A stretch of 35,888 nt of DNA, from NCBI RefSeq assembly GCF_001194135.2, contig NC_068991.1, forward strand, positions 33,179,753-33,215,640, given 5' to 3'. The stretch is from Octopus bimaculoides. Taxonomy: Eukaryota. Below are positions 1 to 32,575 of this stretch, in pieces. Positions within the stretch are counted from its first letter, which is position 1; the number at the start of each line of letters is the position of its first letter. A program made the position numbers and the translations under genes. The notes below the pieces were generated by a model that was not told where the DNA came from, ran no database searches, and worked only from the letters and a program-made list of their open reading frames with translations.

Positions 1-15
1 CAATATATTTTTCAG

Positions 16-181
16 AAATTTTTTGCATCAGAAGAACTCTATTCATTTATCTCTCGTAGTATGTGGGGATCGCCTTGAGGAATCTGTTGTATTATTAAAA
101 TCTGCTGTTTTGCTGACAGACCAACCCCTTGTTTTCCATTTGTTTGTGGAGGACCATCTCCAGAAGAATTTTCAGGATCAA
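16..181 (+). CDS. GXYLT1: Glucoside xylosyltransferase (GT8) internal coding exon A
   Basis: Acceptor ttttttcAG ends at 15 and donor GTataa starts at 182. Frame from 17 gives NFLHQKNSIHLSLVVCGDRLEESVVLLKSAVLLTDQPLVFHLFVEDHLQKNFQDQ, matching the GXYLT segment HLAVVACGERLEE..LKSA...FHIFAED. GXYLT1 vs GXYLT2 cannot be resolved. An alternative acceptor at cag 29-31 is possible. Confidence 0.92.
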
Positions 182-2199
182 GTATAATTTTTCAGCGCTA
201 ATCCAGTTTTGAACTTTAACTATTAATTTCAATATAATGCTATAGCTTTTCGTTTTAATACTATGCATAAAGAAGATACAATTTCTTTAAAGAATAGTGT
301 AAGGTAAGGAAAGGATTGATGCCCTAATGACTTCATCAGTCATTGAGTTGGCCTTTAATATTTTGTTAAAATTATTTCCACTATCTGTTTTGACCTTTGA
401 TTTAAATATTTTTAAAAAAATGGATTAGGGAAAAACTGAATGTTTTGATCTTTATCCTTTGTTACATACCTTACAGATCTTTTTTTAAAGAATTTCTGTA
501 TCTTCTTAACATGGAGCTAAAGTTTGCAAAAGAATTGTTATTTGAGGTGTAAAAAGTAAAACTGCACTAGTGCTACTTTTTTGTATTTTTAATCTTTGAA
601 TTTTATGTTGATTTCAGAAAATGGAGTCTGCTATGCTAAAAAATTTAATGATTAATTAAGATTACAGCCTTAGAGATGAAAATATCTATTTTTTAAATGA
701 TTATGTCTGGTGAAAAAAAAATGAAACAATAAGTTGAAAACAATCCTGAAATTTTAATTAATTAAATACAGCATTATAGTATTAAAAAGGTACTAACTTG
801 TTTGGTGGTCAGCAGAAGAATAGCTCTTTGATATTGTGCTGTGATCAGCTTGTTTATCTTACAGTTATTTTGTTCAGTGTGACTGGGTTCCAGTATGTTT
901 GTTTATTTTTAAAATTTTTTTATGAGGAAGTAAAACAAAAGAATAGGTAATCTTTTGCTTTAGGGACATCTAAGTTCAGGATTGAAAATGAAAGAAAATG
1001 AAGCTAAGAGTGTACAAAAATAAACTTATGTATAAGTGAAATGAATAAGTATCACCTTAGAATATTGAAAATGATTTTTTTTATTATATAAAATATGAAA
1101 GTATTTCTCTCTTTTCTGGTGAAGTAAAACCAAATTATTTAATGACAAAAAAATGAAGTTATTTTATTCATGCCAAAAAAAAACTTTAAAAAAAACAAAC
1201 AAATTAAAGTGAACTGGTGAATCTCAATATTGAGTTGCTTATTTGGCACTAGATTCTTCTAAAATAGAAATTATTTGATTTTTTTTTGTCATGGATGGAG
1301 GTTAAATAAGAAATTTTTTCTTCCAATGGCCAGAGGTTACACAACAGAAAAATTAGGTAAAATATGACATATTCTTCCATTCTTTATAATGTTCATATTA
1401 ATCATCGCTAATTATTATTTTACTTGTATGACCTGTAGAAATTCCACAGAATGGAAAAAATTAAGAGGACTTATTTCAGAAAGAATGGATGATTTGCATT
1501 TTTATAGCATTCCTAGTTTAGCTTTCTTTAAATATACTTGATGTTTGTCTACATTCATTTCCTTATGTCTCCATTGGTGTTGTCTTTTTTTATCGTTTTA
1601 TTATATCTTCACGCTTTTCCTCTGATCTGTGCTCTATATCTGCGCATCCTTTCCTCGGACAGCTTGCAACCATGTTTCTTGTGAATCCAGAGTTTAGGCT
1701 AAATTAACCCTTATAAACAAATGTCAATTTTTTAAGTGAGCAAATGATAAATAATTGCACTTATGCATTTGCAATGGTTGCTATAAAAAAATTAGTTCAA
1801 TAAAAAAGAAATACTTTTCAATATCAACACATCACCACAACCACTGCTATCTGCCTCTCTCTCTCTCTCAATATAACTGCCTCCTCTGTCCATCTCTTTC
1901 TTTCTACCTTTCCCTTCAGCTAACTTTTTAACCATGTAATAAGTATTCCTTCCTCACCCCACCACCCATTGTTAACACTTCTCTTTCCCTCTTTTTCTCA
2001 CATTGTCTTTTTCTCTCCTTCTTTGCCTCTACCGTCAGCTGCCCACATGACCATTTGGCCTAAGTATGTTAATATTAATCACCTTTCTCTATTTCTTCCT
2101 CTCTCCTTTCTTCACTCCTCTCTCTCTCACCCTTACTCCACCTCTTTAAATATTTCACCTTCACCTCTCTAACTAACTAATGTATAACGGGTGAACGAA

Positions 2200-3429: not shown

Positions 3430-4400
3430 GGAGAACCAGCATTTTGTTGATCTTATTAGTAGAGGCCTCTTTGATTGTCGTGTTAATTGGAGTTTGTTGA
3501 ATACTCCAACACCTTTGGCTGTCCTTTGTTTTACATCAGTTTCAAGCATTGCCATCTGCTGTTTGAATGCTACCAAGATATGTGAAGCACTGGATCTTTT
3601 CTGTCTTTCCTCCATTAATTGAGACTATATGCTTCATTGTCTTTGGTATATTTACTCTCAGGCCAATATTTTCAGCTGTTTCAACCAGAGCATTTGTCAT
3701 ACCCTGCATCTCTGTGCAGTTGTTGGTAAGAAAAGCTAAGTCATCAGCAAAGTCTAAATCTGCCAGTTTTATTCTTCTCCATTTTAACCCATGTCCATAG
3801 GCATCCAAGTACCTTAACAGAATGTAGTCCAAGATTATCAAGAAAAATAATGGGGATAGGATGCATCCTTGTTGCACTCCTGATAAGATAGAAAAGAACT
3901 CAGTAAATCCTGATTCTGTTTTTACACGTCAACATGAATCTTGATAAAGTAATTTAACGATTTAGGTATAGTGATTGGGAATCTCTGAAAGAGACTGGCA
4001 CAGCATGCTGTCAAAGGCTTTTGTGAAGTCAATATAATTTGTCACTACTGAGGTTCTATACTCCGGTGATTGCTCAATGAGGTTCCTTAGTGTGAATATT
4101 TCTTTTCTACTCTAAGCACAAGGCCTGAAATTTGGGGGGAGGGGGCCAGTCGATTAGATCGACCCCAGTACGCAACTGGTACTTAATTTATTAATCCCAA
4201 AAGGATGAAAGGCAAAGTCAACTTCGGCAGAATTTGAACTCAGAACTTAAGGATAGACAAGATACTGCTAAGCATTTCGCCTGGCATGCTAACGTTTCTG
4301 CCAGCTCGCCTTAGTTTGAATATTTGTTTATTGTATGATCTTCCTTTTCAAAAACCTGCTTGTTCACTTCTAAGTTTGTAGTCCAGTTCCTGTTGTAATT
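3430..4400 (-). mobile_element. RTE-like LINE reverse transcriptase fragment, interrupted by a SINE
   Basis: KLRSEQAGF..GRS..QIF(T/K)LRNLIEQ, AFDSM, QGCILSPLFFLIILDY, LDFADDLAFL, LRVNIPKT and FTYLGS. Confidence 0.9.
4102..4310 (-). mobile_element. tRNA-derived SINE with target-site duplication
   Basis: Minus-strand A box TGGCAGAAACG (4293-4303) and B box GAGTTCAAATTC (4230-4241), plus a central GCCTTTCATCCTTT core. 15-bp TSD ttagt(g/t)tgaatattt at 4087-4101 and 4311-4325. Second copy at 8984-9196. Confidence 0.9.
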
Positions 4401-4926: not shown

Positions 4927-5514
4927 GGATGCTGGATACAGCTGATATGGGCCATGAAGAGGACAAATGAGCATTTGCTTGAGAGCCATCTTGTTGAACA
5001 CTGATGGAGAGATACTGTGATGGAAAGCCATAATTTTAGAAGAAATTATTTAATTTTGTTGTATCAGAAAACAAAATGAGATGATTTCAAATGAAAAAAA
5101 TGGTTTTAACTCTTTGTGGTTGATTTTAAATTAAGACAACTGAATATTATTTAGGAATGGGGAATCTCAAGGCAAGTAAAGCTGTAAATAATAGCATGTA
5201 AATATTGTGTTACAAATCCTTTGGCTAGAAAAAGTCGAAGCATGTTTACAAGATTTGGGTTTGTGTCCCACAAGCAACTTTCAACTTTTTCTATCCAAAG
5301 AGTTTTTAATCCAATATTTACACACTATTATTTATAGCTTTATTTGCTTCAAGAATTACCATTCCTAAAATGAGTTATTTCACATCCTCAAAGTTCTAAA
5401 TTTGTATGAATATTATTTGTTTTTTACTATAAAAAATTTGATGGACAACACCAAATATGAAACTCGTTTTAGAACCATTATTTCCTAATTTGAACCATAA
5501 CTGCATAAAGATTC

Positions 5515-10131: not shown

Positions 10132-12590
10132 TTGTTATTATTATTCATATATGTACAACAAATTAAACTGTTGGAAAAGAAAAATCCTAACATCGGGCTA
10201 CAAGTAACCTTAGATGCCAAGAACCCTCCTAAGTATCCTAGCTGTCCCTAATAACAGTTTTCTGAGCTGTACTAAACTGGGTTTTATGCCTATTTCCTCT
10301 ATCAATCTGTTCAAATCTTAAGAGATAGTTCCTAATGCACCTATAACATTTTACCTGGACTTTCCATAGTCTTTGTAATTTAGTGGCTAGGTCCTGGTAC
10401 TTTGTTATTTTTTTCTATACCTCTCATATTGATTTTTTCATCATTTGGGACTGTAAAGTCAATTTTCTGGCACTTCTATTCTCTTTATCTACTACTACTA
10501 AATCAAGCCTTCTAGCATCTAATTATTAAAGTCCACAACATCTTATATTTCTTACTTTCTAGTACTTTACTAGGTTCATGTTCATACCATTTATCTGTAT
10601 GGTCAATTCCTAGCTATCTACATAACTCCCAGTGGATTACTCCCCCTAGCTTGTCATGTCTTTTCTTGTATTCTTTCTATGCCAGTATGCTACATTCACT
10701 TACTATATGAGTAACACTTTCTTCTTTTGATTTGCTTAATCTACATTGGGAATTTATTTGGCTTTTATCCAATTAGTCCTTGATGCTTGATCTTGTGTGG
10801 CTACTAACAAACATTTTGTCTCCCTTTTCAGCTTTCCTTTCTGCAATCATAACCATGCCTCACTACTACTATTTGCTGCAACTATCCTTGGGAATCTACC
10901 ATGCAAAGCCTTCTGCCAGTCAGATAACTTTTGTTCTTTTTTCTGGTTTTTAACTTCATTTGGCTTTTAGATTTCCATGTCTTGCTGTGACTGTAGCAGC
11001 TTTTAATACATTTGTTCACTATTATCTGCATAGGAGGCTATATCTACTCTAGCTAACTCCACACAGTCTTCTACTGATTTTAACCTTCTTCCACCTTCCT
11101 TTCTAGGTAAGTATAATCTTGCTACTCCTGCCCTTGGATGGAGTCCTCCATTCATATTGAATTCCTTCCTAGTGCTTCTGTCTAGCTTTGCTAATTCAGT
11201 TTTTGTCCAATCTACAAATGTTGCTGAGTATCTAAGTAATGGTACTGCCCAAGTATTTTCAGCCTTCACTAGATTTGGGCCATTTAGTTTTGACTTCATT
11301 AGCTTCCTTACACTTTTGACGTACTCCTCAATTTTGTTTTCATTTCTATAGTTAGTACTCTGTCAGATTCTAATACTCCTAGATACTTATAATTCTCTCC
11401 TTTCGGTGATTTTAATGCTTGGCCATCAGTTAATTGGATACCTTCACTGTTGACTACCTGTCCCCTTTTCATGACTAATATTGCACACTTAACTATGTCA
11501 AACTCTATGCTTATATCTTTGTTGAAGAGTCTTACAGTCTGTATTAAGAAATCTATCTCTTTTTCATTCTTACTAAAAAGCTTCAAGTCATTCATGTAGA
11601 GCAAATGGTTAATTTTTCTCTTAATATTCTGCCTGCTATACTGAATATACTCAAGCATTCACTTATCCATGAGTGTAGGATGTCATAGGTTTTTTTATCT
11701 GTTTCATGCTATTGTTAGATTTTTCTTTCTAGATTTTACTTCATTTCAAACTGCTTTGTTTATGTATAATATATCATGTGTTCCTCTAGCCTTCTTCTTG
11801 CAACCTTTCTGTTCTTCTGGCAGTAAATTCTGGCTGTCAAGGTGCTCGTAAATGCTTTCTGAAAGCATTCCTGTTAACAGCTTCCACACTAATGGTAAGC
11901 AAGTGATTGGTCTATAATTGCTAGTTGTATTACCCTTGCTTTTATCTTTCATAAGGAGTATTGTTCTCCCTATAGTCATCCAATCTAGTATTATTCCTCT
12001 ATTAAAGCAATCCTAAAGTTGTTCCCTCAGCCTCCCATGTAGACTTCTAAATTTCTTTAACCAATACCCTTGAACTAAATCTGGTCCTGGGCCCTTCCAA
12101 TTTGGCATTTTTCCTAACACTTTACACTAATTTGTCTTAGATCTGGCTGCTTCTCACTCACTACTTCTTTCCTCACTTTCTTTAACCAAACTGCATCTCC
12201 ATTATGATTGATTGGCTTATCCTAAATATTTCTCTAGAACTTTTCAACTTCTTCTACATTAGGTTTCTCATATTCAGTACTTTCTTCTTCACTTCTCTAC
12301 CCAAAGTGTTAACAATCCGTTCTCTATAACGCCTTCTTTTAGGTTCACTTTCTAAGTAGCACTGTATTGCTATCCTGTTTACTTCTCTGGTCCACTTCCT
12401 CGTCCTTACTCTATTGTCTGCTGATGCTGTCTTAGGAAAACAGCTGTGGTCAGGCTGCATCTTTACTGAACCACTGATGAACTAGAGGCCTTCCCTTAAA
12501 GGTCCAACCTCATTTTTACTGTTACAACCAGAGTTTATACACAAGGTAAGGTAACGTTCATCACCATCATCATCACCACTATTATTATTC
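10132..12590 (-). mobile_element. R4/Dong non-LTR retrotransposon, internally deleted and frameshifted
   Basis: N-terminal RKWTREVN..CYLESEPKRRRYRER. RT motifs GRTILLMKD..NYRPITCL, EEQKGC, HLLYMNDLK and YKYLGVLE, then LYLPRKEGGR. Zinc knuckle CRL..KEESVTHIVSEC..KRHD and REL RRLDLVVVDK..IDFTVP..KYQDL. ATT/TAA runs at both ends. Confidence 0.9.
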
Positions 12591-15500: not shown

Positions 15501-15904
15501 ATCAGATTTGTTGTTAGATAACAATTTATCAAAATTAATTAGTTTTTTTAAAGTTGTGTTCTGTTACCAAGCAATAGTAACAGAAGACTACTTATTAAAA
15601 TGAATGTAGATTGTGCCAGGCACAACTCATTTATATAGTGGTCAAAAGCCTGATGCAAGAATACAATTTAACATAGTTAAATATATATTTAGCCATAGCC
15701 TATGATGTGTTGGTTCATTAGCTTCTGCTAAGCAGTTCTCCTGAGATGTGAATTTAAATTCATTGAATTTAAATATCTTAAGTTTCTCATCCTTGAATGG
15801 CAAACTGGAATAAATTTAAGTTACTATTTTGATCTTTGATTTGAATAAAAGGAAGGTAGGATTAGTCAAGGGTTGAACACTTGATTAAAGGCACTAATTT
15901 TATT

Positions 15905-16711
15905 TTTGGGGTAAGAGCACTAAATAGTGAAACATATAAATGCAATGTTATTACCAGTTCGAATATGCTAAAAACACGTTTAGACTTGTAAACAAGCCAT
16001 TCATTGTGTTTTGTCCTGGAGAAAATTTCTCACTGTAGACATATGGTGTAAATACACCCAAATCAGCTCACAGTGCCACCTATCCAGACTGTGAGATGCA
16101 AGCATTTCAGAGTAGTTATCTCCTCTTCAGTCACAGAAACCAGACAGTGGCACTGCAAGCTGATAGGAGAAACAATCTCTCATGTTTTTCCAGTAAACAT
16201 ACATTGGTTGGTAGTGCAAATCAACGGCTCATCGTAAATAAATTATAGGGTGAGAGCATTAAGCAGCGAAAAGTATAAATGCAACGTTATTACCAGTTTC
16301 AATATACTAAAAGCACATTTGGACTTGTAAACAAGCCATTCACTGAGTTTTGTCATGGAGAAAATTATTTTTGCATTTATACTTTTCGCTGCTTAGCACT
16401 CTCACCCCGTAATTTAATTATGATGAGCCATCAATTTGTGCTATCAGCCAGCGGATGTTGATTAGAAAAACATAAAAGATATTGTCTCTCTTATCAGCTT
16501 GCAGCACCAGTTTGGTTTCTGTGACTGAAGAGGAGATAGCTACTCTGAAATGCTTGCATCTCACAATCTAGATAAGTGGTGCTGCAAGCTGATTTGGGCG
16601 TATTTACACCATATGTCTACAGCAAGAAGTTTTCTGGATGACAAAACACAGTGAATGGCTTGTTTACAAGTCCAAACATGCTATTAGCATATTCAAACTG
16701 GTAATAACATT
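15905..16711. mobile_element. 807-bp foldback insertion: 339-bp monomer array plus inverted monomer, with 14-bp TSD
   Basis: Arms 15941-16284 and 16371-16714 are reverse complements (roughly 85% identical by eye). The spacer 16285-16370 repeats the monomer start. Exact direct repeat gcactaattttatt at 15891-15904 and 16712-16725. Confidence 0.9.
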
Positions 16712-17187
16712 GCACTAATTTTATTATCTTTGTCAGTTCTGTGTTCACACCTGCCTTTCATCTCTTCAAAAATAAATGAACTATCTACTAATAATTGATG
16801 CAGTCAAGTTGCATCTTTTTCATTTAAAAATGTTACTTTGTAACCTTTTGAAATATTTCACTAAATTATTAGAAACTAAAACTTAACTTCTGTCATAACT
16901 TATTCATAGGTATCCAGTAAACTAAACATGTATTAAACATATTAGAATATCATTCTAAAAGACTTTTGAGGTTTTAACTTGCTACTGTAAACCTAAAAGT
17001 CTGACAATGAAAGTTTCATAAATTCAATTGCTGCCTCTTCGCTGTCTGGCTGTTTATACACTAATCAGCAAGCTATCTTTCACTTTATCTTTTGGTAATT
17101 TTTACTATCAATCACTCCCTATTGACCAACATTATTAATAAATTTGAATATGAGAAATTTTATTAATGTGTACAAATTGTTTTTTAG

Positions 17188-17322
17188 CTTGACTTCTGGC
17201 CTGATTCATTCCGTAATAAAATTTTCTACCGAATCTTTGCAATTCAATATCCATCTGACCAAAACCAAGAAGAATGGTGGAAATTATTCAAGCCATGTGC
17301 ATCACAACGTCTGTTTATTCCG
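17188..17322 (+). CDS. GXYLT1: Glucoside xylosyltransferase coding exon B (135 nt, phase 0-0)
   Basis: ttttttAG|...|GTaaat. Translates LDFWPDSFRNKIFYRIFAIQYPSDQNQEEWWKLFKPCASQRLFIP, carrying the hallmark GXYLT motif KLFKPCASQRLF. In frame with exon A. Confidence 0.96.
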
Positions 17323-17640
17323 GTAAATAAACTTCAACTATATTACTAACTCTTAGCAACACACTGGTTTGTAATTTCTGACATTATTTTAATTCATCAG
17401 TACTGGAACAAGTTGTAACATTGGCTTAAGTCTACAGTGGATGGCTGAAGTTTAGATATATTTTTTCTGCTTTTCAGAAGGTGATTTCACTATATTTCTG
17501 TTGATCAGGTAGACAACAAACTTGTAGGGAAGAAGTATAATTCATTTTGTCTATTAGGAATCCTGGAGGAATGATAAGCAAGGTCACTCCCATAGTTGAT
17601 ACTAGAAGAATTTAAGCTCATTATGTAGTGAAATGAAGTG

Positions 17641-19319: not shown

Positions 19320-22300
19320 GTGCTTTTTACATGCCACCAGCACGGGGAGCCAGTCGGGCGGCTCTGGTAATAACCTACGCATGAATGGTGCTTATTGCAT
19401 GCCACCAGCACTGGTATTGGCCACAACTACAATTTCCATTTGATTGCGATTTGATTTTGATTTTGATTTACTTGACTCAGTAGGTCTCAAGCACGGCATG
19501 TTGTCTGACAACTCAAAAGTACTTTTAAAATGGGCTGGTTATGTGACACTGGTGTAGGCTATGGCTGTGATCTCATTTCTTTGCCGGGTCTTCTCAATCA
19601 CAGCATATCACCAGAGGTCTCGATATTTTGTCATTGCCTCTGTGAGGCCCAACATTCAGAGGTCATGCTTCACCACCTTATCCCATGTCTTCCTGGGTCT
19701 CCCATTTCCACAAGTTCCTTCCACATGACCATACCAGCACAGTCATCTCTCTTGCACACCACATCTGATGCTTCTTATGTCCAACATTTCTCTCGGCGCT
19801 TACACTCTGTCATGTGTGCACACTGACATTACACATCCAGCGGATCATACAAGCTTCATTTCTTTCAAGCCTACATATGTCCTCAGCAGTCATGGCCCAT
19901 GTTTCACTGCCATGTAGCATGGCAGTTCACACACATGCATTATACAATCTACTTTTTACTCTGAGTGAGAGGCCCTTTGTCACCAGTAGAGGTAGGAATT
20001 TCTGAACTTTGCCCAGGCTATTCTTATTCTAGTAGCAATGCTCTCTGAGCATCCACCCCCACTACAGACTTGGTCACCCAGGTAGCAGAAGCTATCAACT
20101 ACTTCTAGTTTTTCCCCCTGGCATGTGATGGAATCAGTTTTCTGAACATCTGTGGTGTTTATTGCCCCTGTGCATCTGCCGCACACAAAAGCTATCTTCC
20201 CAGTTAACCTTCCTTTGATGTTGCTGCACCTCTTATGTGCCCATAGCTTACACTGGGTACATCTTATAGAGTTACTACCTACTCCTTTTCTACATACTGA
20301 GCAGGGCCATCTACCTGAAGGGGTTTGTGTTTTATCTACCTTCCTACTTATTAGGATTTTGGTGAACCCCTACTTCTACCCGGAATTCTTTGCTATACTC
20401 ATTGCTGACCCTTACCTTACTAACGTCATCCCTGTACAAGGCTTGTACAGCTCTTATTAACCACTCATTAATCCCCAGTTTCTGCATCGCCCACCAGATA
20501 AGGGATCGGGAGACCCTGTCAAAGGCTTTCTTCAAGTCAACAAAAACCAAGTGTAGGGGTTTATCTTTGGCTAGGTATTTCTTTTGCAGTTACCATACCA
20601 GGAATATAGTATCAGTGGTACTTCTACCTGGCACAAAACTGAACTGCATCTCATCTAAGCAGACTCTCTCCCTAATTAGTTGGGCTATGATCCTCTCCTA
20701 TAACCCTCTCCTTGACCTGATCCAGCAGTTTGATACCCCTGTAGTTATCTCTATCTAAAACATCACGTTTACCTTTGGCTACGTATCTCTCCTGCAGCTG
20801 TCTTACCAGAAATATAGCATCAGTGGTGCTTTTACCTGGCATGAACCCAAGCTGTGTCTCATTTAGACTGACTCTCTCCCTAATTAGTTGGGCTACAACC
20901 CTCTCTGTAACCTTCATTACCTGATCCAACAATTTGATACCTCTGTAATTATTTGTATCTAAAGCGTCACCTTTACCTTTGTAGCAGTTGACTATGGTGC
21001 TGCTACTCCAATCATTGGGTATGATTCCTTTGTAAACTACCTGGTTTACAATACAGGTGACTAGGTCATGACCCTCACCACCAGATATGGGCCAGGGGCT
21101 TTTACTGACTTCATATCCCTAATTGCTTTATCTACCATGATGCTATCTATTTGGGTAGCTGGGTCAACATTTGGCAGGCTCTCCTTCTCCTATACATTCT
21201 CCACATTCAGCAGCCTTTCATAATGGCTTCTCCAAGTCTCTTTCTTTTCAGAATCATTAAAAGCAAGTGCACCATCATCCATGCAGACACATTTCTCTCT
21301 TGTGACATCACAATTTTCTCTCACACACTATCCTTGCAATCTGAAATACTTCAGTTTGTTGGTCCTCATGTCAATGAACATTGGCAAACTTCTTTTCTGC
21401 TTCTCCTTTGGCTAGATATACCTGTTGCCCAGCCTCCCTTATGGCTATCTGGTACAGTTCCTTGCTACCCCACTCTTACAGGCTTTTCAAGCCTGTTTCT
21501 TTGCTCTAATGACCTTGTCTACCATATTATTCCACCACCACCACCACCACCACCACATTACTCTAAGTCTGGAAGGGACTTTGCACCAGCCATAGATTTG
21601 CTCTGTGACACTCAGTAAGCTGTCCCTCTATGTCTGAAGTCTGTAGCTCCTCCTCCCTGTCATCAAATTTCTCAGTGAGGATGTCTGTAAATCTCTGACC
21701 ATGTGAAGGGTTCTTTATCTTCCAAATCCTTCTTTTCTGGATTGGTCTGCTTCTTGGCATCCTTCTGGCCTCGAGTCTAAAGTCTCTAATGACTAATCTA
21801 TGCTAGGGGGTACATTCTTCACCAGGGAGAGTCTTTGTATTTAAGAGTGACCCTGCATCATACTGTCTGGTGAGGATGAAATCAATCTGGCTAACAGAGT
21901 CGCCTGATTGATAGGTTATCAGGTGGCTATCTGGCTTCCTGATGTTAGTGTTGCAGATTAATAGGTTGCATGCATCACAGAATTCCAGTAGCCTAGTTCC
22001 CTCTTTGTTTCAGGGACCAATTCCATGACCCCCACTGAACACCATGGAAGACAACTGGATTGCTGTCCAACATGCCCATTAAAATCTCCAGCTGCAAAGA
22101 TGAGGTTATTGTCACTCGTCTTTGGGGTGGCTTGTAGAAGGGTATCATAAAAGTGGTCCTTCTGATTGTTTGATAGGCCTGTTTATGGGGCGTAGGCAGA
22201 GATAATTGTAACTATACAATTCTGCAGGACTAGCCTGAGCTTCAGCACTCTATCGCATGCCCTGATTACCTCTATGACCTTATCCACCCATTTCTCTGTA

Positions 22301-22560
22301 AGGAGTATGCCTACATTTCCTACTCCATCACTGTTACCTTCCCAGAAGATTTTATACCTATGTGCCTCGCCCGTGAGGACCCTGGCTGAAGCTCCTCTCC
22401 ACCTTACCTCTTGTATGCAGCAAACATGAACACATCTCCATTCAAGCATCTCTACAATCTCACTAGACCTACCTTTCAGTGTGCCTACATTGAGTGCTAA
22501 CTCTAAAAACAGGGAAAGGAATATGGGAGGAGACGTGGAAAGGGGAGGTGTTATTCAGTG
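19320..22560 (-). mobile_element. Near full-length degenerate RTE LINE (APE endonuclease, RT, PHD finger)
   Basis: APE: RSSEIVEMLE..CCIQEVRWRG..IISAYAP and GDNNLIF..FNGH. RT: NYRGIKLL, QFSFVPGRST, FVDLKKAFDRV and VGVHQ, with the YADD segment deleted. PHD at 20172-20303, then VVDSFCYLGD and a 3' subrepeat array. Confidence 0.92.
20565..20976 (-). repeat. Diverged tandem duplication (208 + 204 bp) inside the RTE RT
   Basis: ctttggctaggtat..catcacgtttac (20565-20772) and ctttggctacgtat..cgtcacctttac (20773-20976) both encode NYRGIKLLDQV..QL..GFMPG.STTDAIF..QE.Y.AK. Confidence 0.9.
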
Positions 22561-22857: not shown

Positions 22858-23319
22858 ATTAAGTAGGTGGGCAGCTAAACTAGTTGCATTTGTCCCAAGA
22901 GATAGAGAGAGGGAGAGGAAATTGCAGGTATGATAGAGGATACCACCAGTGAGGGGAGGGGGTTTCCGGTGAGAGAAGAGAACAAGCATACCCATATACA
23001 CTCACACACACAAAAATGAGCATGCACACACCCACAAGACAAGCATGCATACAGACAAGAACAAGCATGCACAGACACACACACGTAACAAGCACGCATG
23101 TATAGCCCATTAGCTTTCTCCTTCTACTTTGATACGTCCATGGAAATTACAGAGTAGTTTGTTGACAAATTTCGAGTCAAGACAAAAAATAGCCAATTAA
23201 GTAGGTAGGCAGCTAAATTAGTTGCATTTGTCCCAGGAGAGAGAGAGAGAGGGAGAGGAGATTGCAGGTATGTTAGAGGATACCACCAGTGAGGGAGAGG
23301 TTTTCTGGTGAGAGAAGAG
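22858..23319 (+). repeat. Direct repeat pair, about 123 bp (22858-22980 and 23196-23319)
   Basis: attaagtaggt(g/a)ggcagctaaa(c/t)tagttgcatttgtccca..gataccaccagtgaggg..ggtgagagaagag. Confidence 0.9.
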
Positions 23320-23410
23320 AGATACCTGGTAATGGTGGTGAGAAAAGAGATATCTGGCATTGGTGGAGGGAGGAGAAAGAGAGAGAGATCCAGTATTGTT
23401 GGGGCTGGGG

Positions 23411-23619
23411 NNNNNNNNNNNNNNNNNNNNNNNNNNNNNNNNNNNNNNNNNNNNNNNNNNNNNNNNNNNNNNNNNNNNNNNNNNNNNNNNNNNNNNNNNN
23501 NNNNNNNNNNNNNNNNNNNNNNNNNNNNNNNNNNNNNNNNNNNNNNNNNNNNNNNNNNNNNNNNNNNNNNNNNNNNNNNNNNNNNNNNNNNNNNNNNNNN
23601 NNNNNNNNNNNNNNNNNNN
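23411..23619. other. Assembly gap (209 N)
   Basis: Run of N next to a (GA)n tract. Confidence 1.
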
Positions 23620-24260
23620 AGAGAGAGAGAGAGAGAGAGAGATTTAGGAAGTTATATATTGAAGGATCAAAGTAGATATTAGTAAATAATACATAAATAA
23701 ATAAACGTAAATAATAATACATATTAAAAAGTGTTAATGGCGAATGGATGAGTGAAAAGATCGAAAAATGAGAGAGTATCTTAGCTTAGCAATGCATAAC
23801 TGAGTGTCCGAGAACAATTTAAGTTGAGATTGTGTGAAAAACAAGGAGGAAGTGTGTGAGTGAAGTGTCTTATAGATATGCTATGACTAGAAGTGGACAT
23901 TATGGAGGATGCTTTCTTCCTTCTTGGGCTGGAGACAATAGCAATGGTAGTAGAGAATAGCACAAGGAGCCATTGTGAGTGAAAAGAAATAAGAGAATAG
24001 TATGAAAAATAAGAAAAATATTTAGCCAACATGAAACCTGGAGAGAACAAGCACCACGAACAAGAAAGGGTTAATTTAGAGAGATGAGACGAAAAATATG
24101 TAGCCAACTTGAGAACACAGGAGGGAAGGAGAGATTCCATTTAGAGGAACGAAGGCTGAGAGAGAGAGAGATTTAGGAAGTTATCTATTGAATGGTCAAT
24201 TTAAATAATTAGCTTACGAAAGTAGATATTGGTAAATGATACATAAATAACTAAATAAAT
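23620..24260 (+). repeat. Direct repeat pair (GA)n-tttaggaagttat..agtagatatt..acataaataa (23620-23712 and 24158-24260)
   Basis: Two copies about 530 bp apart; the second has a roughly 20-bp insertion. Confidence 0.8.
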
Positions 24261-24269
24261 ATCAAACTA

Positions 24270-26560
24270 ATTGAGGGTCTAGCCATCAGAGTTGATAGCA
24301 GTATAACAGATAAGGCAATTAAGGATATGAAGGCTGGGAAAGCCCCTTGACCATTGGGTATCACTGCCGAGATGATTAAATATCTGACAGTGTGAGATAC
24401 AGCCTAGTTACTCGCTTAGTTAATCAGATTATTCAGGAAAGCGTCATCCCCAAAGACTGGTGTAGTAATATTATAGTTAGCTGCTACAACGGTAAAGGTG
24501 ATACCTTAGATAGAAACAACTACAGAGGTATCAAACTGCTGGACCAGGTCATGAAAATTAGAGAGAGAGTTATAGTTCAGTTGGTTAGGAATAGAATTAA
24601 ACTAGTTGAGATGCAGTTTGGTTTTGTTTCTGGGAGAAGTACCACAGATGCCATCTTCCTAATGAGACAACTGCAGGAAAAATATTTGGTCAAAAGTAAA
24701 CTATTGTACTTAGGTTTTTTTACAGAGTTCGCTGCTCTCTTATCTGGTTGTCTATAAGGAAGCTAGGAGTAGAGGAGTGGCTTGTTAGAACCGTACAGTG
24801 ATTAATTTAGCACATAAGTTGGAGTTCTTCAGGGATCAGTTCTTAGTTCACTCTTATTCATCATAATTTTCCAGGCCATAACAGAGGAATTGAAAACTGG
24901 CTGCCCATGAGAACTGCTATATGCTGATGACCTCACTCTTATTGCAGAATCTATAACAGAATTGGAGAAGAGATTCCAGGTTTGGAAGCAACCTATCAAA
25001 GACTAAAGTTGTTGTTAGCAAGAAAGATGATAAGACTCTTTATGTCAGGTAAATGGCTCTACTATATATGTAGGAAAAGAGTGGGAAGTAATTCTCTTTG
25101 TTGCACCCCATGTAAGTTATGGATTCATAAGAGATGCAGTGGAATTGCAGATAGGTGAACAGATAAGGTTACTTTCGTGTGTGGCAGATGTACACATAAG
25201 CACTGGTATGTGGGACTTAGACTCTCTCAAATGCCGAAGAGGCTTTCTTGAGGTAGTAGATAGTCTCTACTTCTTAGGTGACCAAATTAGTAAAGGTGGT
25301 GGATGCTCTGAAAGTATTGTTTCTAGCATAAGAATAGGATGGAGGAAGTTCAGACAGCTATTATTTCTGAGGGCAACAAAAGAACTCTCTCTCAGAGGGG
25401 AAGGTAGATTGTATGATGCTTGTGTACAAATGGCTGTACTCTATGGTTGTGAGATATGGGCTCTGAATGTGGAGGACATCAATAGACTGGATTGGAATGA
25501 AGGTAGTATGCTCTGTTGGATTTGCAACATCAGTGTGCATGACCGACATAGTGCAACTGTGTCGACAGAAAAGTTAGGCATAAGAAGAATTAAATGTGGC
25601 ATGCAAGGAGAGGAGAATGCATTGGTTTGGATATCTGATGTGTATGAGTTAAGACAGCTGTATACAGAAGTGCCTGTCACTGAAAGTGGATGGTACCTGT
25701 GGAAGAGGGAGACCCAGGAAGACATAGGATGAAGTGGTGAGGACCAATCTCAGGATGTTAGGACTCATGGAGGAAATGACAATGGACCGAGATGTTTGGC
25801 AATATGAGGTTCTAGAGAAGACCTGCTCACATCGGTGAAACTGTGTGCTAGAAGCATTGTATCCTACCCACATGTAACAATAAACTTTTCACACACCCAA
25901 CTCCAAGAAACCAAACCACATCTCTTCTAAACTGCATCTTTCTCTTCACATTTCCTCTTCATATACTATGATTGTCTCCCACTCCTCTTCCCTGCCCTCA
26001 CTTGCCTGCTCACTGTATCACTGCTCCCCCTCCCCATCCTCATACCCAGGTTTTAACCAGTCACTGCAATCCTCACTCCCTACTCATGCCTTCTTGGCAA
26101 TACCCGGCCAAGTATATTATGACCTCCGTACCTTGAGGACATACCCTGGCAATTCTTCTTTACTTTACTATTACATCTGTGCTCTGATCCTTGTTACTTG
26201 TATATATACCCTGGCACTTCACCACCATCTCTCTTGCACTTTTGCTATTTCTCACTCACTCTCTCTCTCTCTCTCCCTCGCTCTTCCCTTGGGCTGGATA
26301 GCCATGTATTTCCTTTACGGCAACACACCTATTTCTGCCCTTATTCTTGATCACTCCCTCTCTCTCCTTCTCTTGCTTTTCCCTCTGGCTAGGTAACCCA
26401 GTATCTCCTTTACATTAGCACACCTGTTTCTGTCCTTTCTTGTACCTCTCTCTTCCTCTTATTCTCTCTTTCTCTTTTCTCTCTCTTTCTCACTCCCTCT
26501 CTGGTTGGGTAACCATGTGCCTCCTCTATAGCAAGACACCTATTTCTGCCTCTCTATATC
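24270..26560 (+). mobile_element. 5'-truncated RTE LINE with RT, PHD finger and long 3' UTR
   Basis: AIKDMKAGKAP, NYRGIKLL, QFGFVSGRSTTDAIF, VLQGSVLSSLLF, LLYADDL (about 24915-24932), PHD (about 25050-25190), FLGD, GRLYDACV and GRPRKT*DE, then a CT-rich UTR. Confidence 0.92.
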
Positions 26561-26564
26561 TCCA

Positions 26565-27650
26565 TCACTCAGGTATGTGGCCCTGTTTGATTTGTAGGAA
26601 AGGTATTGGCAGGAACACAATATGGTTTAGCCAGTGTAAGCTATGGACACACAAAAAGGTGCACACAAAAAGGTGCATAGGAAGCTTATTAGAGAAGGTA
26701 GTGTTCATATGTGGAAGATGCATAGGATCCATAAAATCTACTGAGATTCAGGAAATTGATTCTCTGAAATGCCCTGGTGGCTCATTAGAGATAGTAGATA
26801 CTTTCTGCTACCTAGGGGACCAAATTAGTAGTGGGGAAGGATGCATGGAGAGTGTGATAGCTAGAATAGGAATTGGATGGAGGAAATTCAAAGAGCTGTT
26901 ACCTCTGCTGGCTATGAAAGGTTTCTCTCTCCAAGTGAAAGGAAGATTGTATGATGCATGTATATGGAGAGCAATTCTACATGGTGGTGAGACATAGGTG
27001 CATACAAAGGTTAGAGAGGAGCAAGGCCAGTATGCTCCGCTAAATGTGTAATGTAAGTTGACATGTTTGACAGAGTGCTAGTGTATTAAGAGAGAAGTTA
27101 GGCATAAGAGGAATTAGTTGCTGTGTGCAAGAGAGAAGACTGCGCAGGCTTGGTCATGTTATGTGGATGGATGCTGACAGCTCCTTAAAGAAGTGCTAAT
27201 CTCTCAGAGTAGATGGAACATGTGGAAGTAGGAGACCCAGGAAGACATGGGATGAAGTACTGAAGGGCAACCTCAAGATGCTGAACTTTTCAGGCAAGAT
27301 GGTAAAGAACTGAGATGCCTGGTGCGTTGCTGTTCTCAAGAAGACCCATACTCCACAGCAGAAGTGTTAAAACCAGTCCCCCTGGTGGTGGGTCTTGACC
27401 TGCAAGAATCCTGTGCCAGTTTCATGTAAAAAGCACTCATGGTGGTGCCACATAAAAGTGTCTGTGTGGCACCTTGTAAAAACACCTGTATGGTGCCACG
27501 TAAAAGCACCCAGCACACTTTATAAAATGGTTGGTATTAGGAAAGGCATCATGTATAAAAAACATGCCAAATGAGACTGGAGCCTGTCAGCTCTGGTCAA
27601 ACCATCCAAACCACGTCATCATGGACAACGGATGTTAAATGGTGATGGAC
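26565..27650 (+). mobile_element. Second RTE 3' fragment starting at the PHD finger, with hairpin-array tail
   Basis: SGMWPCLICRKGIG..QCKLWTHKK..RC..FICGRC, VDTFCYLGD, GRLYDAC, then (ggtgccacgtaaaagcacc)-like units and the tail ggacaacggatgttaaatggtgatg. Confidence 0.9.
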
Positions 27651-31075: not shown

Positions 31076-32023
31076 CAGATGAACATGAGTCATTATGAGT
31101 ACTGGTAATTGGAACCTTTCAGTTATAATGTATACTATATACATATATATCATCAGTAGTTCATATATTCAAGGAAGAAGCATTCTCTAAAACATCGGAG
31201 TAGTAATGTATTTGACTCAGGTCAAATCTTTATTGAGCAGCAGCAGTTTCCTAACATGCATAATTATGTCTATGTTCCTTTTGTAATGTCATTTTAGTTC
31301 CTAGCAAACATAAACACCTTAACCAATAATCCTTTTGATATAGATAGATAAAAATCAACTATATTGAATTGGGTGAAGCTTACTATGTCTCAATCTTTAT
31401 TGGCTTTAAACCATGAAATCACTTCATTAGTACTATGCTATAAGGAGAAATCAGAGACCCTCCTTATGTAATTGACTTTTTTCATTATTAAGCAGCTTTA
31501 AGAGAAATGCTGGGAGCTATATCAGCTCTTGTGTGTTGAATTTGTAGCATTTTTAAATGCCTTTGATGCCATAAATTGTAAAAAGCAACGATCAACTCCA
31601 GTCTTCTCATTTAGATACTGGGACTGCACAATTTCTGTTGTCAACATACTGGACAAAGAAATTCAAAACCACCTTAGACAGAACTCCATACCCCTTAGAA
31701 GGCTTTGTGAAGAAATATTTTTAAATATCCATTTCAGCTTTCATGCTAAAGTCCTCGTCTGCTTGACAATGTGTTTTGATTAATGTGTATTGGTGTGCAA
31801 CATAGACTACATAAAGCTGTTACATTAATGATGATGGAGTAAAGGTTGTTTGCCAACATAACGTGGCAGTCCTGGTTTAGGATGAATGTTGCTGTAATTT
31901 AGCTCCAGGAGACATCATCTTCAGCTGGCTATACGACACGATCTGTGTCCTTATATTTTCGAACAAAATTGATAATTTTTCACATTATTTTTTACTGTTT
32001 TATCTACTTCTTTTATTTTACAG

Positions 32024-32216
32024 CATATCTTAGTAGACGTTGATTCCTTACTTTACGTTGATACAGATGTTCTGTTCTTGAGTCCAGTCACTGCTATATG
32101 GGAAATCTTCAACAAATTTTCTGAATCCCACACAACAGGACTAGCACCAGAGCATGAAGATGCTGGTACTGGGTGGTACAACAGATTTGCTCAACATCCA
32201 TTTTTTAAACCTTTAG
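32024..32216 (+). CDS. GXYLT1: Glucoside xylosyltransferase coding exon C (DxD motif)
   Basis: ttttatttacAG|...|GTattt. Translates HILVDVDSLLYVDTDVLFLSPVTAIWEIFNKFSESHTTGLAPEHEDAGTGWYNRFAQHPFFKPL-G, with the YVDTD metal-binding motif and APEHE..GWYNRFA.HP. Confidence 0.96.
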
Positions 32217-32425
32217 GTATTTTTCGTTTTTGATTCAGTTTTAAAAAAATTGATCAGCTATATAATAGTAATATTGCTAGATTTAATGTATTGTCTTTGT
32301 ATCGTATTTATTTTCAATTAAAAAAAACTTCACTGACATATGAATATTTTCAAAGATAGTATTGTTTTTCTCATTCTTTCTTTTGTCAAATGAAATTTTT
32401 TTCCCTTTGTTCCTTTTCTTTTAAG
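32217..32425 (+). other. GT-AG intron, 209 bp
   Basis: Phase-1 intron splitting the Gly codon G|GT. Confidence 0.92.
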
Positions 32426-32575
32426 GTGTCAATTCAGGTGTTATGTTGATGAATTTGACAAGAATCAGATGCACAAAATGGCAATCGTTAATCATAGAAT
32501 ATTACAAGACTTACAGATATAAAATTGTTTATGGAGACCAAGACCTTGTGAATATCTATTTTCATTTCAATGCAG
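32426..32575 (+). CDS. GXYLT1: Glucoside xylosyltransferase coding exon D
   Basis: ttttctttta AG|...|GTaggc, phase 1-1. Translates (G)[49 protein letters not shown], with the GT8 NSGV and GDQD motifs. The next exon was not found within the window. Confidence 0.95.

What the first reader, a model, noticed from the sequence alone, without database searches (positions are those of the whole stretch)
15891..16725. TSD-flanked foldback insertion built from a 339-bp monomer, 470 bp upstream of a coding exon
Seen: 15905-16370 is about 1.4 tandem copies of a 339-bp monomer (tgcaa..ttattaccag at 15941 and again at 16280). It is followed directly by an inverted monomer at 16371-16714, giving 344-bp arms at roughly 85% identity around an 86-bp spacer. 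The whole is bracketed by an exact 14-bp direct repeat (gcactaattttatt). There is no ORF or tail, and the inverted repeat does not reach the left terminus, so it does not fit a standard MITE. Inference: a single insertion event, either a Foldback/Mutator-like non-autonomous element or a satellite RNA retrotransposed with a twin-priming inversion (a 14-bp TSD is typical of TPRT). In the GXYLT pre-mRNA it would form a roughly 340-bp duplex, a candidate ADAR or small-RNA substrate near the 17188 acceptor.
Basis: partly seen in the sequence, partly recalled or inferred. Interest (0 to 1): 0.78.

Follow-up and report, generated by a model that had tools for sequence, protein, structure and literature searches.

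The report
Hammerhead-ribozyme retroelement insertion, Penelope-style
The "foldback" in this GXYLT intron is an old, dead insertion of a 339-bp ORF-less repeat carrying a hammerhead self-cleaving ribozyme motif, laid down in the partial-tandem, inverted-copy and 36-bp-tail pattern typical of Penelope-like retrotransposons, so it is a known kind of element rather than a new one.

Summary
The structure is real and at the stated coordinates. It has 1.37 tandem copies of a 339-bp unit (15905-16370), an inverted full unit (16371-16714, 86% identical, 86-bp spacer) and an exact 14-bp flanking repeat.

One lies on the + strand at 16520-16565 and one on the - strand at 16136-16089. These are the only two hits in the window, against none in 300 simulated windows.

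Taking the ribozyme strand as sense, both arms have 5' ends at the centre and 3' ends at the flanking repeats. The left arm runs 36 bp further 3' than the right.

Partial tandem, head-to-head inverted copy, a 30-40-bp one-sided "tail", a target-site duplication and an HHR together form the published signature of Penelope-like element (PLE) integration. The ORF-less, AT-rich, self-paired 339-nt unit matches animal non-LTR retrozymes.

The three copies are equidistant, and many differences sit at decayed CpGs, so this looks like one old insertion decaying in place. With one ribozyme per strand it cannot release a unit-length RNA.

Caveats: Rfam reports no hammerhead, no other family copy could be retrieved, and reads were unavailable. 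The 344-bp pre-mRNA duplex folds as predicted, but editing and small RNAs are untested.

Verdict: a new member of a known kind, of moderate interest.

The parts
15891..15904 (.). Left copy of the flanking direct repeat GCACTAATTTTATT (target-site duplication, 11-14 bp)
   Evidence: Exact 14/14 match to 16712-16725, with no similarity beyond it. It is rare by chance.
15905..15940 (-). 36-bp 3' extension ('tail') of the left arm: the first 36 nt of a further unit beyond the TTGCA position where the right arm ends
   Evidence: With the adjoining TTGCA (41 columns) it aligns to the start of the unit at 76-78% identity. Its length falls in the 30-40-bp range of the PLE tail.
15941..16284 (-). Full 339-bp unit of the left arm, plus the 5-nt TTGCA overlap; sense is on the - strand
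   Evidence: 86% identical to the reverse complement of 16371-16714.
16089..16136 (-). Type-I hammerhead ribozyme motif, left copy. Helix I is 6 bp. Predicted cleavage lies between 16095 and 16094 on the - strand.
   Evidence: Descriptor hit CTGTGA-CTGAAGA-GGAG(ATAACTA)CTCT-GAAA-TG(CTTG)CA-TC|TCACAG. The minimum-free-energy fold shows helices I and II.
16280..16370 (-). 5'-truncated unit (last 91 nt of a unit) lying upstream, in sense terms, of the full left unit. Its 5' end sits at the central junction.
   Evidence: 86-87% identical to the matching part of both full units. The three-way comparison is star-like, 5/6/7.
16371..16714 (+). Inverted full unit (right arm), sense on the + strand. 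It begins and ends with TTGCA, so it is exactly one unit plus 5 nt.
16520..16565 (+). Type-I hammerhead ribozyme motif, right copy, in the same sense as the GXYLT transcript. Helix I is 5 bp. Predicted cleavage follows C16560.
   Evidence: Descriptor hit TGTGA-CTGAAGA-GGAG(ATAGCTA)CTCT-GAAA-TG(CTTG)CA-TC|TCACA. It differs from the left copy at one loop-2 base within the 46-nt motif; the sixth helix-I pair of the left copy is a C.A mismatch here.
16491..16593 (+). Hammerhead plus the long extension of helix I (about 30 bp with small bulges). The equivalent on the - strand is 16164-16062.
   Evidence: Inverted repeats I7 and I8 flank the ribozyme and pair in the predicted folds of the unit RNA.
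16712..16725 (.). Right copy of the flanking direct repeat. Its first 3 nt (GCA) are shared with the unit end.
17188..17323 (+). Context: GXYLT-like coding exon (LDFWPDSFRNKIFYRIFAIQYPSDQNQEEWWKLFKPCASQRLFIP), with acceptor tttttag| and donor |gtaaat
   Evidence: Translation. The concatenated exons match glucoside xylosyltransferases with E-values down to 1e-77.

Best explanation
The region is one old retrotransposition event. A non-autonomous, ORF-less 339-nt repeat carrying a type-I hammerhead ribozyme was inserted into an AT-rich site of a GXYLT intron by the machinery of a Penelope-like element (reverse transcriptase plus GIY-YIG endonuclease). The repeat is an animal 'non-LTR retrozyme' or a pseudo-LTR-derived unit.

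Inferred steps:
1. The endonuclease cut both target strands 11-14 bp apart.
2. Each exposed 3' end primed reverse transcription on unit RNA, which was multimeric or circular.
3. Priming used two internal start sites 36-39 nt apart. One is the TTGCA position (right arm). The other is the 'tail' position (left arm).
4. The left cDNA ran 1.37 units. The right cDNA ran exactly one unit.
5. Their far ends, the 5' ends in RNA sense, were joined at 16370/16371.

The result is a head-to-head inverted structure with 3' ends outward, flanked by the duplicated target.

Since then the three copies have decayed independently, largely at methylated CpGs. Each strand holds only one ribozyme, so the locus cannot release unit-length RNA and is a dead copy. 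In the GXYLT pre-mRNA it would fold into a 344-bp imperfect duplex that also buries the sense-oriented ribozyme of the right arm. Any effect on the host gene is unproven.
For: Shown here:
- The structure and the flanking repeat are confirmed.
- A strict type-I hammerhead descriptor (CUGANGA, 4-bp helix II, GAAA, A15.1-U16.1 plus 2 bp capped by a tetraloop, UH, helix I of 5 bp or more) hits only twice in 35.9 kb on both strands. Both hits are in the full units, and 300 simulated windows gave none even with relaxed settings.
- The architecture is helix I of 5-6 bp followed by an internal loop, helix II of 4 bp with a 7-nt loop, and a short helix III with a 4-nt loop. This is how PMC4209133 describes canonical metazoan type-I ribozymes.
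- In ribozyme sense both arms point outward (head-to-head). The left arm consists of a 91-nt truncated unit, a full unit and a 36-nt extension. The right arm is exactly one unit.
- The unit is 37.5% G+C, has no ORF, and its RNA is more structured than shuffles (z = -3.6 and -2.8), with helix I extended to about 30 bp.
- The three copies are equidistant (5/6/7 private changes). 41 of 48 substitutions are transitions. 20 of 48 sit at ancestral CpGs against 7.8 +/- 2.6 expected. The window's CpG observed/expected ratio is 0.18.

From the literature:
- PLE insertions are partial tandems, often with an inverted 5'-truncated copy adjacent at the 5' end and a 30-40-bp tail at one end (PMC8557442).
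- The typical Penelope structure is described as direct pseudo-LTRs (pLTRs), an inverted pLTR, a 31-bp tail at the 3' end of one inverted pLTR and a TSD. Head-to-head is the commonest arrangement, and pLTRs alone suffice for mobilisation in trans (PMC3846280).
- A purified PLE protein cleaves and extends both DNA strands and starts reverse transcription at two internal sites whose spacing is the tail (PMC11167929).
- PLE pLTRs carry hammerheads, and pairs of hammerheads 100-700 bp apart on opposite strands are seen (PMC4209133).
- Animal non-LTR retrozymes are roughly 150-450-bp, low-GC, ORF-less tandem units with type-I hammerheads and TSDs longer than 4 bp, including in molluscs (PMC7229834).
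- These retrozymes are argued to be PLE derivatives (bioRxiv 10.64898/2026.07.22.740005).
Against: - Rfam 15 reports no hammerhead family here, at gathering score or at E <= 10 on a 96-nt slice. The ribozyme call therefore rests on my descriptor and on the literature description.
- The pair closing helix II (10.1-11.1) is G.U instead of the usual G-C.
- Self-cleavage is untested.
- No second copy of the family could be found, so the two 3' ends cannot be shown to be recurrent start sites and the family's copy number is unknown. The searches were viral contigs, two metagenome scans, prokaryote genomes and a composite-ORF protein search.
- No PLE reverse transcriptase or GIY-YIG remnant is visible in the window. 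The reverse-transcriptase fragments present look LINE-like.
- The 14-bp duplication is longer than the 8-10 bp examples quoted for rotifer Penelope.
- The left copy of the duplication shows some similarity to the unit's own sequence (8 of 13 positions with one gap, by eye), so that boundary could be a few bases off.
Confidence: 0.7

Rival explanations
1. The same hammerhead-bearing repeat RNA was inserted by target-primed reverse transcription, but by a LINE (non-LTR) enzyme, with L1-style twin priming producing the inversion.
For: A variable-length duplication of 11-14 bp and 5' ends meeting in the middle fit twin priming. The window is full of LINE-like reverse-transcriptase fragments. PMC7229834 leaves LINEs open as possible mobilisers.
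Against: Neither 3' end has a poly(A) or simple-repeat tail. The two 3' ends differ by 36-39 nt, which is the PLE-specific tail signature and is reported as not seen in non-LTR TPRT. Hammerheads are a PLE-associated feature.
Confidence: 0.14
2. It is a DNA-level foldback or MITE-type transposon (Foldback/Mutator-like).
For: It has long inverted arms with a spacer and a flanking direct repeat.
Against: The inverted repeat stops 36 bp short of the left end. The termini TTTGGGG... and ...ACATTGCA are not complementary. A 14-bp duplication fits no DNA-transposon superfamily I know of. The arms are whole units of a tandem repeat carrying a ribozyme.
Confidence: 0.03
3. There was no transposition. 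Either a pre-existing single unit was locally duplicated and inverted by replication template switching, or a fragment of satellite DNA (for example extrachromosomal) was captured at a staggered double-strand break.
For: The three copies are equidistant, as expected for any simultaneous origin. No other copy was retrieved to prove mobility.
Against: An exact 14-bp duplication sits precisely at both outer boundaries. The outward 3' polarity and the 36-bp offset coincide with a known enzymatic signature. Template switching does not predict a target duplication.
Confidence: 0.08
4. It is an assembly artefact: a chimeric or palindromic read, or a collapsed repeat.
For: PLE tandem and inverted structures are known to trouble assemblies. 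An N gap elsewhere in the window (23411-23619) shows the assembly is not finished.
Against: Artefactual palindromes are near-identical, whereas these arms differ at 14% of positions plus two indels, with a CpG-decay pattern. The 14-bp duplication is not expected from an artefact.
Confidence: 0.03

Closest known systems
Penelope-like element (PLE) insertions, and pLTR-only or trans-mobilised derivatives (Penelope/Poseidon, Neptune, Naiad; PMC8557442, PMC3846280, PMC11167929)
   Same: It shares the partial tandem of the terminal unit, an adjacent inverted copy in head-to-head orientation, a one-sided extension of 36 bp (published range 30-40 bp) at a 3' end, a target-site duplication and a hammerhead motif in the repeated unit.
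   Different: There is no reverse transcriptase/GIY-YIG ORF between the repeats, and what lies upstream of the full unit is another unit rather than ORF sequence. The duplication is 11-14 bp against the 8-10 bp rotifer examples. The hammerhead has the canonical metazoan architecture rather than the 'minimal' variant typical of metazoan PLE pLTRs.
Animal non-LTR retrozymes (newt satellite 2, axolotl Rtz_331/353, Mytilus 350-390-bp repeats, Acropora 220-240-bp repeats; PMC7229834)
   Same: The unit is 339 bp, low in G+C (37.5%) and lacks ORF, LTR, primer-binding site and polypurine tract. It has one type-I hammerhead per unit with a short helix III, a self-paired unit RNA, and a duplication longer than 4 bp.
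   Different: Only 1.37 units and a single ribozyme are present per strand, so no unit-length or circular RNA can be released from this locus. An inverted arm is present. I did not see an inverted arm described for retrozymes in the passages I read.
L1 twin-priming inversions
   Same: Both target strands prime cDNA synthesis, the 5' ends meet internally, and the duplication is of variable length.
   Different: There is no poly(A). The template is a repeat or circle rather than one linear mRNA. Two defined 3' ends lie 36 nt apart.
Intronic hammerhead ribozymes of amniotes (mentioned in PMC7229834 and PMC4209133)
   Same: A sense-oriented type-I hammerhead motif lies inside an intron of a protein-coding gene (right arm, + strand).
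   Different: Here it is a by-product of a decayed mobile-element copy. It is predicted to be locked in a 344-bp duplex, and there is no evidence of conservation across species.

Membership tests
Type-I hammerhead ribozyme | Catalytic core: C3-U4-G5-A6-N7-G8-A9, G12-A13-A14, an A15.1-U16.1 pair, and H17 that is not G | tested here: met
   CTGAAGA ... GAAA ... T-C| is present in both copies (coordinates checked).
Type-I hammerhead ribozyme | Three helices in type-I order, with metazoan sizes: helix I about 6 bp then a loop, helix II 4 bp, and a short helix III capped by a 2-4-nt loop | tested here: met
   Helix I is 5-6 bp followed by an internal loop and a long extension. Helix II is GGAG/CUCU (one G.U) with a 7-nt loop. 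Helix III is AUG/CAU with loop CUUG. This was compared with the description in PMC4209133.
Type-I hammerhead ribozyme | Scores against the curated covariance models (Rfam Hammerhead_1 and relatives) | tested here: not met
   No hammerhead family was listed at gathering score or at E <= 10.
Type-I hammerhead ribozyme | Self-cleavage at the predicted site | not testable with these tools
   This needs in vitro transcription of monomeric and dimeric constructs.
Animal non-LTR retrozyme | ORF-less unit of roughly 150-450 bp and low G+C containing a type-I hammerhead | tested here: met
   The unit is 339 bp and 37.5% G+C, its longest stop-free stretch is 69 codons, and it has one motif per unit.
Animal non-LTR retrozyme | Head-to-tail tandem of at least two units, so that two ribozymes on one strand release a unit-length RNA | tested here: not met
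   The - strand holds 1.37 units and the + strand one unit, with one ribozyme each. This locus fits the 'monomer derivative' category of the 2026 preprint.
Animal non-LTR retrozyme | Highly self-paired unit RNA | tested here: met
   Circular folds give -89.4 and -86.4 kcal/mol, z = -3.6 and -2.8, with 60% of bases paired.
Animal non-LTR retrozyme | Multi-copy family expressed as linear and circular RNA | not testable with these tools
The window holds no other copy and the external searches were empty.
Penelope-like element insertion signature | Partial tandem of the terminal unit (pseudo-LTR arrangement) | tested here: met
   A 91-nt truncated unit lies directly upstream of a full unit on the same strand.
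Penelope-like element insertion signature | Adjacent inverted copy at the 5' end (head-to-head) | tested here: met
   With polarity set by the ribozyme, both 5' ends meet at 16370/16371.
Penelope-like element insertion signature | Optional 30-40-bp tail at one 3' end | tested here: met
   The left arm extends 36 nt past the position where the right arm ends, or 39 nt if the shared GCA is assigned to the target. Whether this is a recurrent family feature could not be tested.
Penelope-like element insertion signature | Encodes, or co-occurs with, a PLE reverse transcriptase and GIY-YIG endonuclease | tested here: not met
   There is no ORF in the insertion. No GIY...YIG pattern was found in any of the six frames of the window. 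The reverse-transcriptase fragments in the window match the general Pfam family RVT_1, with a PHD finger, and look LINE-like. Absence from 36 kb says little about the genome.
Foldback / MITE DNA transposon | Terminal inverted repeats that reach both ends, with a duplication of fixed superfamily-specific length | tested here: not met
   The inverted repeat starts 36 bp inside the left end and the termini are not complementary. The duplication is 11-14 bp.
LINE-mediated (L1-type) retroposition with twin priming | A 3' poly(A) or simple-repeat tail next to the duplication | tested here: not met
   The ends read ...CCCCAAA|AATAAAATTAGTGC (sense of the left arm) and ...AACATTGCA|CTAATTTTATT. Neither has a tail.

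The most novel reading that the evidence does not exclude
The right arm begins and ends at the same unit position (TTGCA...TTGCA, 339 + 5 nt). A random 5' truncation would land there only about 1-2% of the time. This could be the footprint of reverse transcription exactly once around a 339-nt circular RNA, while the other target strand primed a 1.37-turn copy from the second start site. If so, the locus would be a clean genomic record that PLE machinery integrates ORF-less ribozyme circles by priming from both cut strands. That link has been argued so far mainly from co-occurrence and pLTR phylogeny in vertebrates. A weaker add-on is that the sense-oriented intronic ribozyme or the 344-bp duplex affects GXYLT pre-mRNA processing, editing or small-RNA production.
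Probability: 0.15. Interest if true: 0.6.

Novelty: new member of a known kind. Interest (0 to 1): 0.38.

Why it matters
The finding turns an apparently unclassifiable 'foldback' into a textbook-complete footprint of a poorly understood transposition mechanism. One small, ORF-less, ribozyme-bearing unit shows every Penelope-type hallmark at once: partial tandem, head-to-head inverted copy, one-sided 36-bp tail and target duplication.

This is structural support, from an invertebrate, for the recent proposal that animal retrozymes are mobilised by Penelope-like elements. It also agrees with the in vitro finding that a PLE protein primes from both target strands at two start sites.

For annotation, such loci should be labelled PLE or retrozyme-derived rather than Foldback or MITE. 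A simple hammerhead descriptor finds them where Rfam models do not.

For the host gene, the insertion places a long intronic duplex and a sense-strand ribozyme motif about 630 nt upstream of an exon. The copy is old and evidently tolerated.

Tried and rejected
I therefore made no test of reads, empty-site alleles, A-to-G mismatches, small RNAs or misassembly.
- Family copies: nothing was retrieved.
  - An exact-ORF look-up across the central junction found nothing.
  - The ribozyme pattern found nothing in viral contigs, metagenome contigs or prokaryote genome contigs.
  - A 20-mer conserved in all three copies found nothing in metagenome contigs.
  - A composite of all open frames of both arms found nothing in the 5.8-billion-protein collection.
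  - These collections probably do not hold the source organism, so the emptiness says nothing about copy number.
- Rfam: it returned only sub-threshold matches to hairpin-shaped microRNA-precursor families and some short sub-threshold small-RNA matches (snoRNA, U6atac), no hammerhead, and nothing at gathering score in the whole window.
- tRNA-derived SINE idea: rejected, because no tRNA-like gene was found.
- Compensatory changes in the extended helix I: rejected as evidence for selection. Two double changes and four wobble-preserving single changes were seen. They arise at paired CpGs and are compatible with neutral decay (and my own reckoning).
- Near-identity of the ribozyme block: the 46-nt motif has 1 difference. 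This is not significant once its lack of CpGs is allowed for (P about 0.08 at 8.7% non-CpG divergence; my arithmetic).
- Taxon: unresolved. The best GXYLT hit is 59% identity to Mizuhopecten and no cephalopod protein appeared. I ran no further search on this.
- Repeat at 22858-23321: its similar 338-340-bp spacing suggested a relation to the unit, but its sequence is unrelated.
Full report
**1. The observation**

- A 339-bp period links 15904-16027 to 16243-16366 at 85% identity.
- The landmark TGCAA(T/C)GTTATTACCAG occurs at 15941 and 16280.
- A local alignment pairs 15941-16284 with the reverse complement of 16371-16714. The arms are 344 bp, with 294 of 342 aligned bases identical (86%), two 2-nt indels and an 86-bp spacer.
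- The 14-mer GCACTAATTTTATT occurs exactly at 15891-15904 and 16712-16725, and the sequence outside it is unrelated.
- Outside microsatellites and internal repeats, such exact 14-mer pairs are almost absent from the window. Simulated windows average 0.46 anywhere in 36 kb.
- The window holds no other copy of the unit.
- The longest stop-free stretch inside the insertion is 69 codons.
- No tRNA-like gene is present.
- Tandem Repeats Finder misses the 1.37-copy tandem.

The insertion ends 476 nt upstream of a GXYLT-like exon at 17188-17323. That exon, joined to three other exons of the window, matches glucoside xylosyltransferases over 99% of its length, but at only 59% identity to the best hit, a scallop.

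**2.

The + strand at 16520-16565 reads TGTGA-CTGAAGA-GGAG(ATAGCTA)CTCT-GAAA-TG(CTTG)CA-T-C|TCACA. In order, this gives:
- the 5' strand of helix I;
- the CUGANGA core;
- a 4-bp helix II with a 7-nt loop;
- the GAAA core;
- helix III, made of A15.1-U16.1 plus two pairs and capped by CUUG;
- the cleavage dinucleotide U-C;
- the 3' strand of helix I.

The same motif lies on the - strand at 16136-16089, where helix I is 6 bp. I encoded this as a descriptor and searched the whole window on both strands. These are the only two hits. 300 first-order-Markov windows (about 21 Mb) gave none, even with relaxed helix lengths.

The geometry matches the description in PMC4209133 of the canonical metazoan type-I hammerhead: helix I of 6 bp, helix II of 4 bp, and a short helix III capped by a 2-4-nt loop. 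In folds of the unit RNA, helix I continues after a small internal loop into a roughly 30-bp stem. That stem is formed by the short inverted repeats I7 and I8. The circular 339-nt RNA is more stable than shuffles, with z = -3.6 and -2.8.

Points against the ribozyme call:
- Rfam reports no hammerhead family at any threshold I could set.
- The pair closing helix II is G.U rather than G-C.
- Cleavage is untested.

**3. Polarity and anatomy**

Taking the ribozyme strand as RNA sense, the right arm (16371 to 16714, + strand) and the left part (16370 to 15905, - strand) both start at the central junction and read outward. The arrangement is therefore head-to-head, with both 3' ends abutting the flanking repeat.

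An alignment in register resolves the pieces.
- Right arm: exactly one unit, from TTGCA to TTGCA (339 + 5 nt).
- Left part: the last 91 nt of a unit, then a full unit, then 36 more nt (15940 to 15905) that repeat the beginning of the unit.

This gives a partial tandem plus an adjacent inverted copy. The two outer 3' ends sit 36 nt apart in unit coordinates, or 39 nt if the GCA shared between unit and target is assigned to the target. Neither end has a poly(A) or simple-repeat tail.

**4. Comparison with known systems**

This combination is the published signature of Penelope-like elements (PLEs).
[quoted passage not shown] The paper notes that such a tail is not seen in TPRT by non-LTR elements.
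- PMC3846280: the typical Penelope has direct pLTRs, an inverted pLTR, a TSD and a 31-bp tail at the 3' end of one inverted pLTR. Head-to-head is the most frequent arrangement, and pLTRs alone suffice for mobilisation in trans.
- PMC11167929: a purified PLE protein cleaves and extends both target strands. Reverse transcription starts at two internal template sites, and the sequence between them is the tail.
- PMC4209133: hammerheads reside in PLE pLTRs, and pairs of motifs 100-700 bp apart on opposite strands are common. Here the two motifs lie about 380 bp apart, with their predicted cleavage sites about 465 bp apart.

The sequence upstream of the full unit is another unit, not ORF sequence. 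The template was therefore an ORF-less tandem or circle. That matches the animal non-LTR retrozymes of PMC7229834: 150-450-bp, low-GC, self-paired units with type-I hammerheads and TSDs longer than 4 bp, known in molluscs among others. A 2026 preprint argues these are non-autonomous derivatives of PLE pLTRs.

This locus has only one ribozyme per strand, so it cannot release a unit-length RNA. It corresponds to the dead 'monomer derivatives' of that preprint.

**5. History**

In the 91 columns shared by all three copies, private changes number 5, 6 and 7, which is a star-like pattern.

Between the two full units:
- 41 of 48 substitutions are transitions;
- 20 sit at positions consistent with an ancestral CpG, including seven TG-versus-CA sites;
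- column shuffles give 7.8 +/- 2.6 such positions, with a maximum of 18 in 2000 shuffles.

The whole window has a CpG observed/expected ratio of 0.18. The simplest reading (an inference) is a single insertion from near-identical template sequence, followed by long in-place decay in methylated DNA.

Non-CpG divergence is 8.7% pairwise. At that rate an intact CpG-free 14-bp duplication is unremarkable (probability about 0.28).

Two further observations do not call for selection:
- The 46-nt ribozyme block has one difference, which is not significant once its lack of CpGs is considered (P about 0.08).
- The apparent compensatory changes in the extended helix I arise at paired CpGs.

I cannot exclude that the arms were copied from already divergent templates.

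**6. Consequences for the host gene**

As + strand RNA, 15891-16725 folds into the predicted long duplex at -484 kcal/mol, with z = -34. The right-arm ribozyme is in the sense of the GXYLT transcript, with predicted cleavage after C16560, 627 nt upstream of the acceptor. In that fold it is paired with its antisense copy.

The same gene region also contains other inverted repeats, so a long intronic duplex is not unique to this element:
- two LINE-like copies at 19587-21088 and 24380-25823, 70-76% complementary;
- a 90-nt hairpin at 5150-5369.

**7. Rivals**

- LINE-mediated twin priming remains possible at about 0.14. The window is rich in LINE-like reverse-transcriptase fragments. However, this does not explain the tail or the lack of a 3' tail sequence.
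- A DNA foldback or MITE is contradicted by the termini and the duplication length.
- Local rearrangement or capture of satellite DNA does not predict the target duplication together with the enzymatic signature.
- An assembly artefact is unlikely, because the arms differ at 14% of positions in a mutational pattern.

**8. Limits**

No other family member could be retrieved from any collection available to me. Three things therefore remain untested: the recurrence of the two 3' ends, the copy number, and the existence of a matching autonomous PLE. No PLE coding remnant is visible in the window.

**9. Verdict**

It misses the defining feature, the hammerhead, and the family, which is a PLE-type insertion of a retrozyme-like unit.

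This is a new member of a known kind and is of moderate interest. Its main value is as an unusually complete footprint tying an ORF-less ribozyme repeat to Penelope-type integration. The exact one-unit length of the right arm hints at a circular template, but this is speculative.

Noticed in passing
window 16550-16654 (+) and 16105-16001 (-): A 34-codon ORF starts at the AUG inside the hammerhead's GAAAUG and is open in both arms, with the same length (MLASH...DKTQ*, 26 of 34 residues identical). In some PLEs the element's ORF starts inside the ribozyme, so this could be a relic of a PLE N-terminus, or it could be chance.
   Followed up: no
window 22858-22981 and 23196-23321: A roughly 125-bp segment is duplicated at 338-340 bp spacing (90-95% identity). 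It sits next to GA/GGA/GAA microsatellites and just before the assembly gap (N run 23411-23619). The spacing resembles the 339-bp unit, but the sequence is unrelated and has no hammerhead hit.
   Followed up: partly
window 19587-21088 (-) and 24380-25823 (+): Two decayed copies of one LINE-like family lie in inverted orientation, 3.3-6 kb apart, around the assembly gap. They carry RVT_1 and PHD-finger matches and have arms 70-76% complementary. They would form another long-range duplex in the same pre-mRNA.
   Followed up: partly
window 5150-5239 and 5280-5369: This is a 90-nt inverted repeat, 81% complementary with a 40-nt spacer. It is a compact hairpin of the kind made by MITEs or foldback fragments.
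   Followed up: no
whole window: The window's CpG observed/expected ratio is 0.18 at 37.5% G+C, which is very strong CpG depletion across introns and repeats. It suggests heavy germline methylation of this gene body and is consistent with the CpG-decay pattern between the arms.
   Followed up: partly
window 2-184, 17188-17323, about 31990-32222, 32425-32575 (+): Four GXYLT-like exons are separated by introns of about 17 kb, 14.7 kb and 0.2 kb. The best database match is only 59% identity (Mizuhopecten yessoensis) and no closer relative appeared, so the source taxon seems absent from the protein collection.
   Followed up: partly
window 3545-3928 (-), 11006-12012 (-), 21566-22554 (-), 26419-26994 (+): Further decayed non-LTR retrotransposon fragments fill the introns. 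They include RVT_1 matches and one fragment that by eye resembles an endonuclease. None shows a GIY-YIG pattern.
   Followed up: partly
window 23629-23705 and 24158-24255: A direct repeat of a (GA)n run plus about 80-100 bp (88-92% identity, spacing 529-550 bp) brackets the stop-free stretch at 23784-24140. It may mark the ends of another small element.
   Followed up: no
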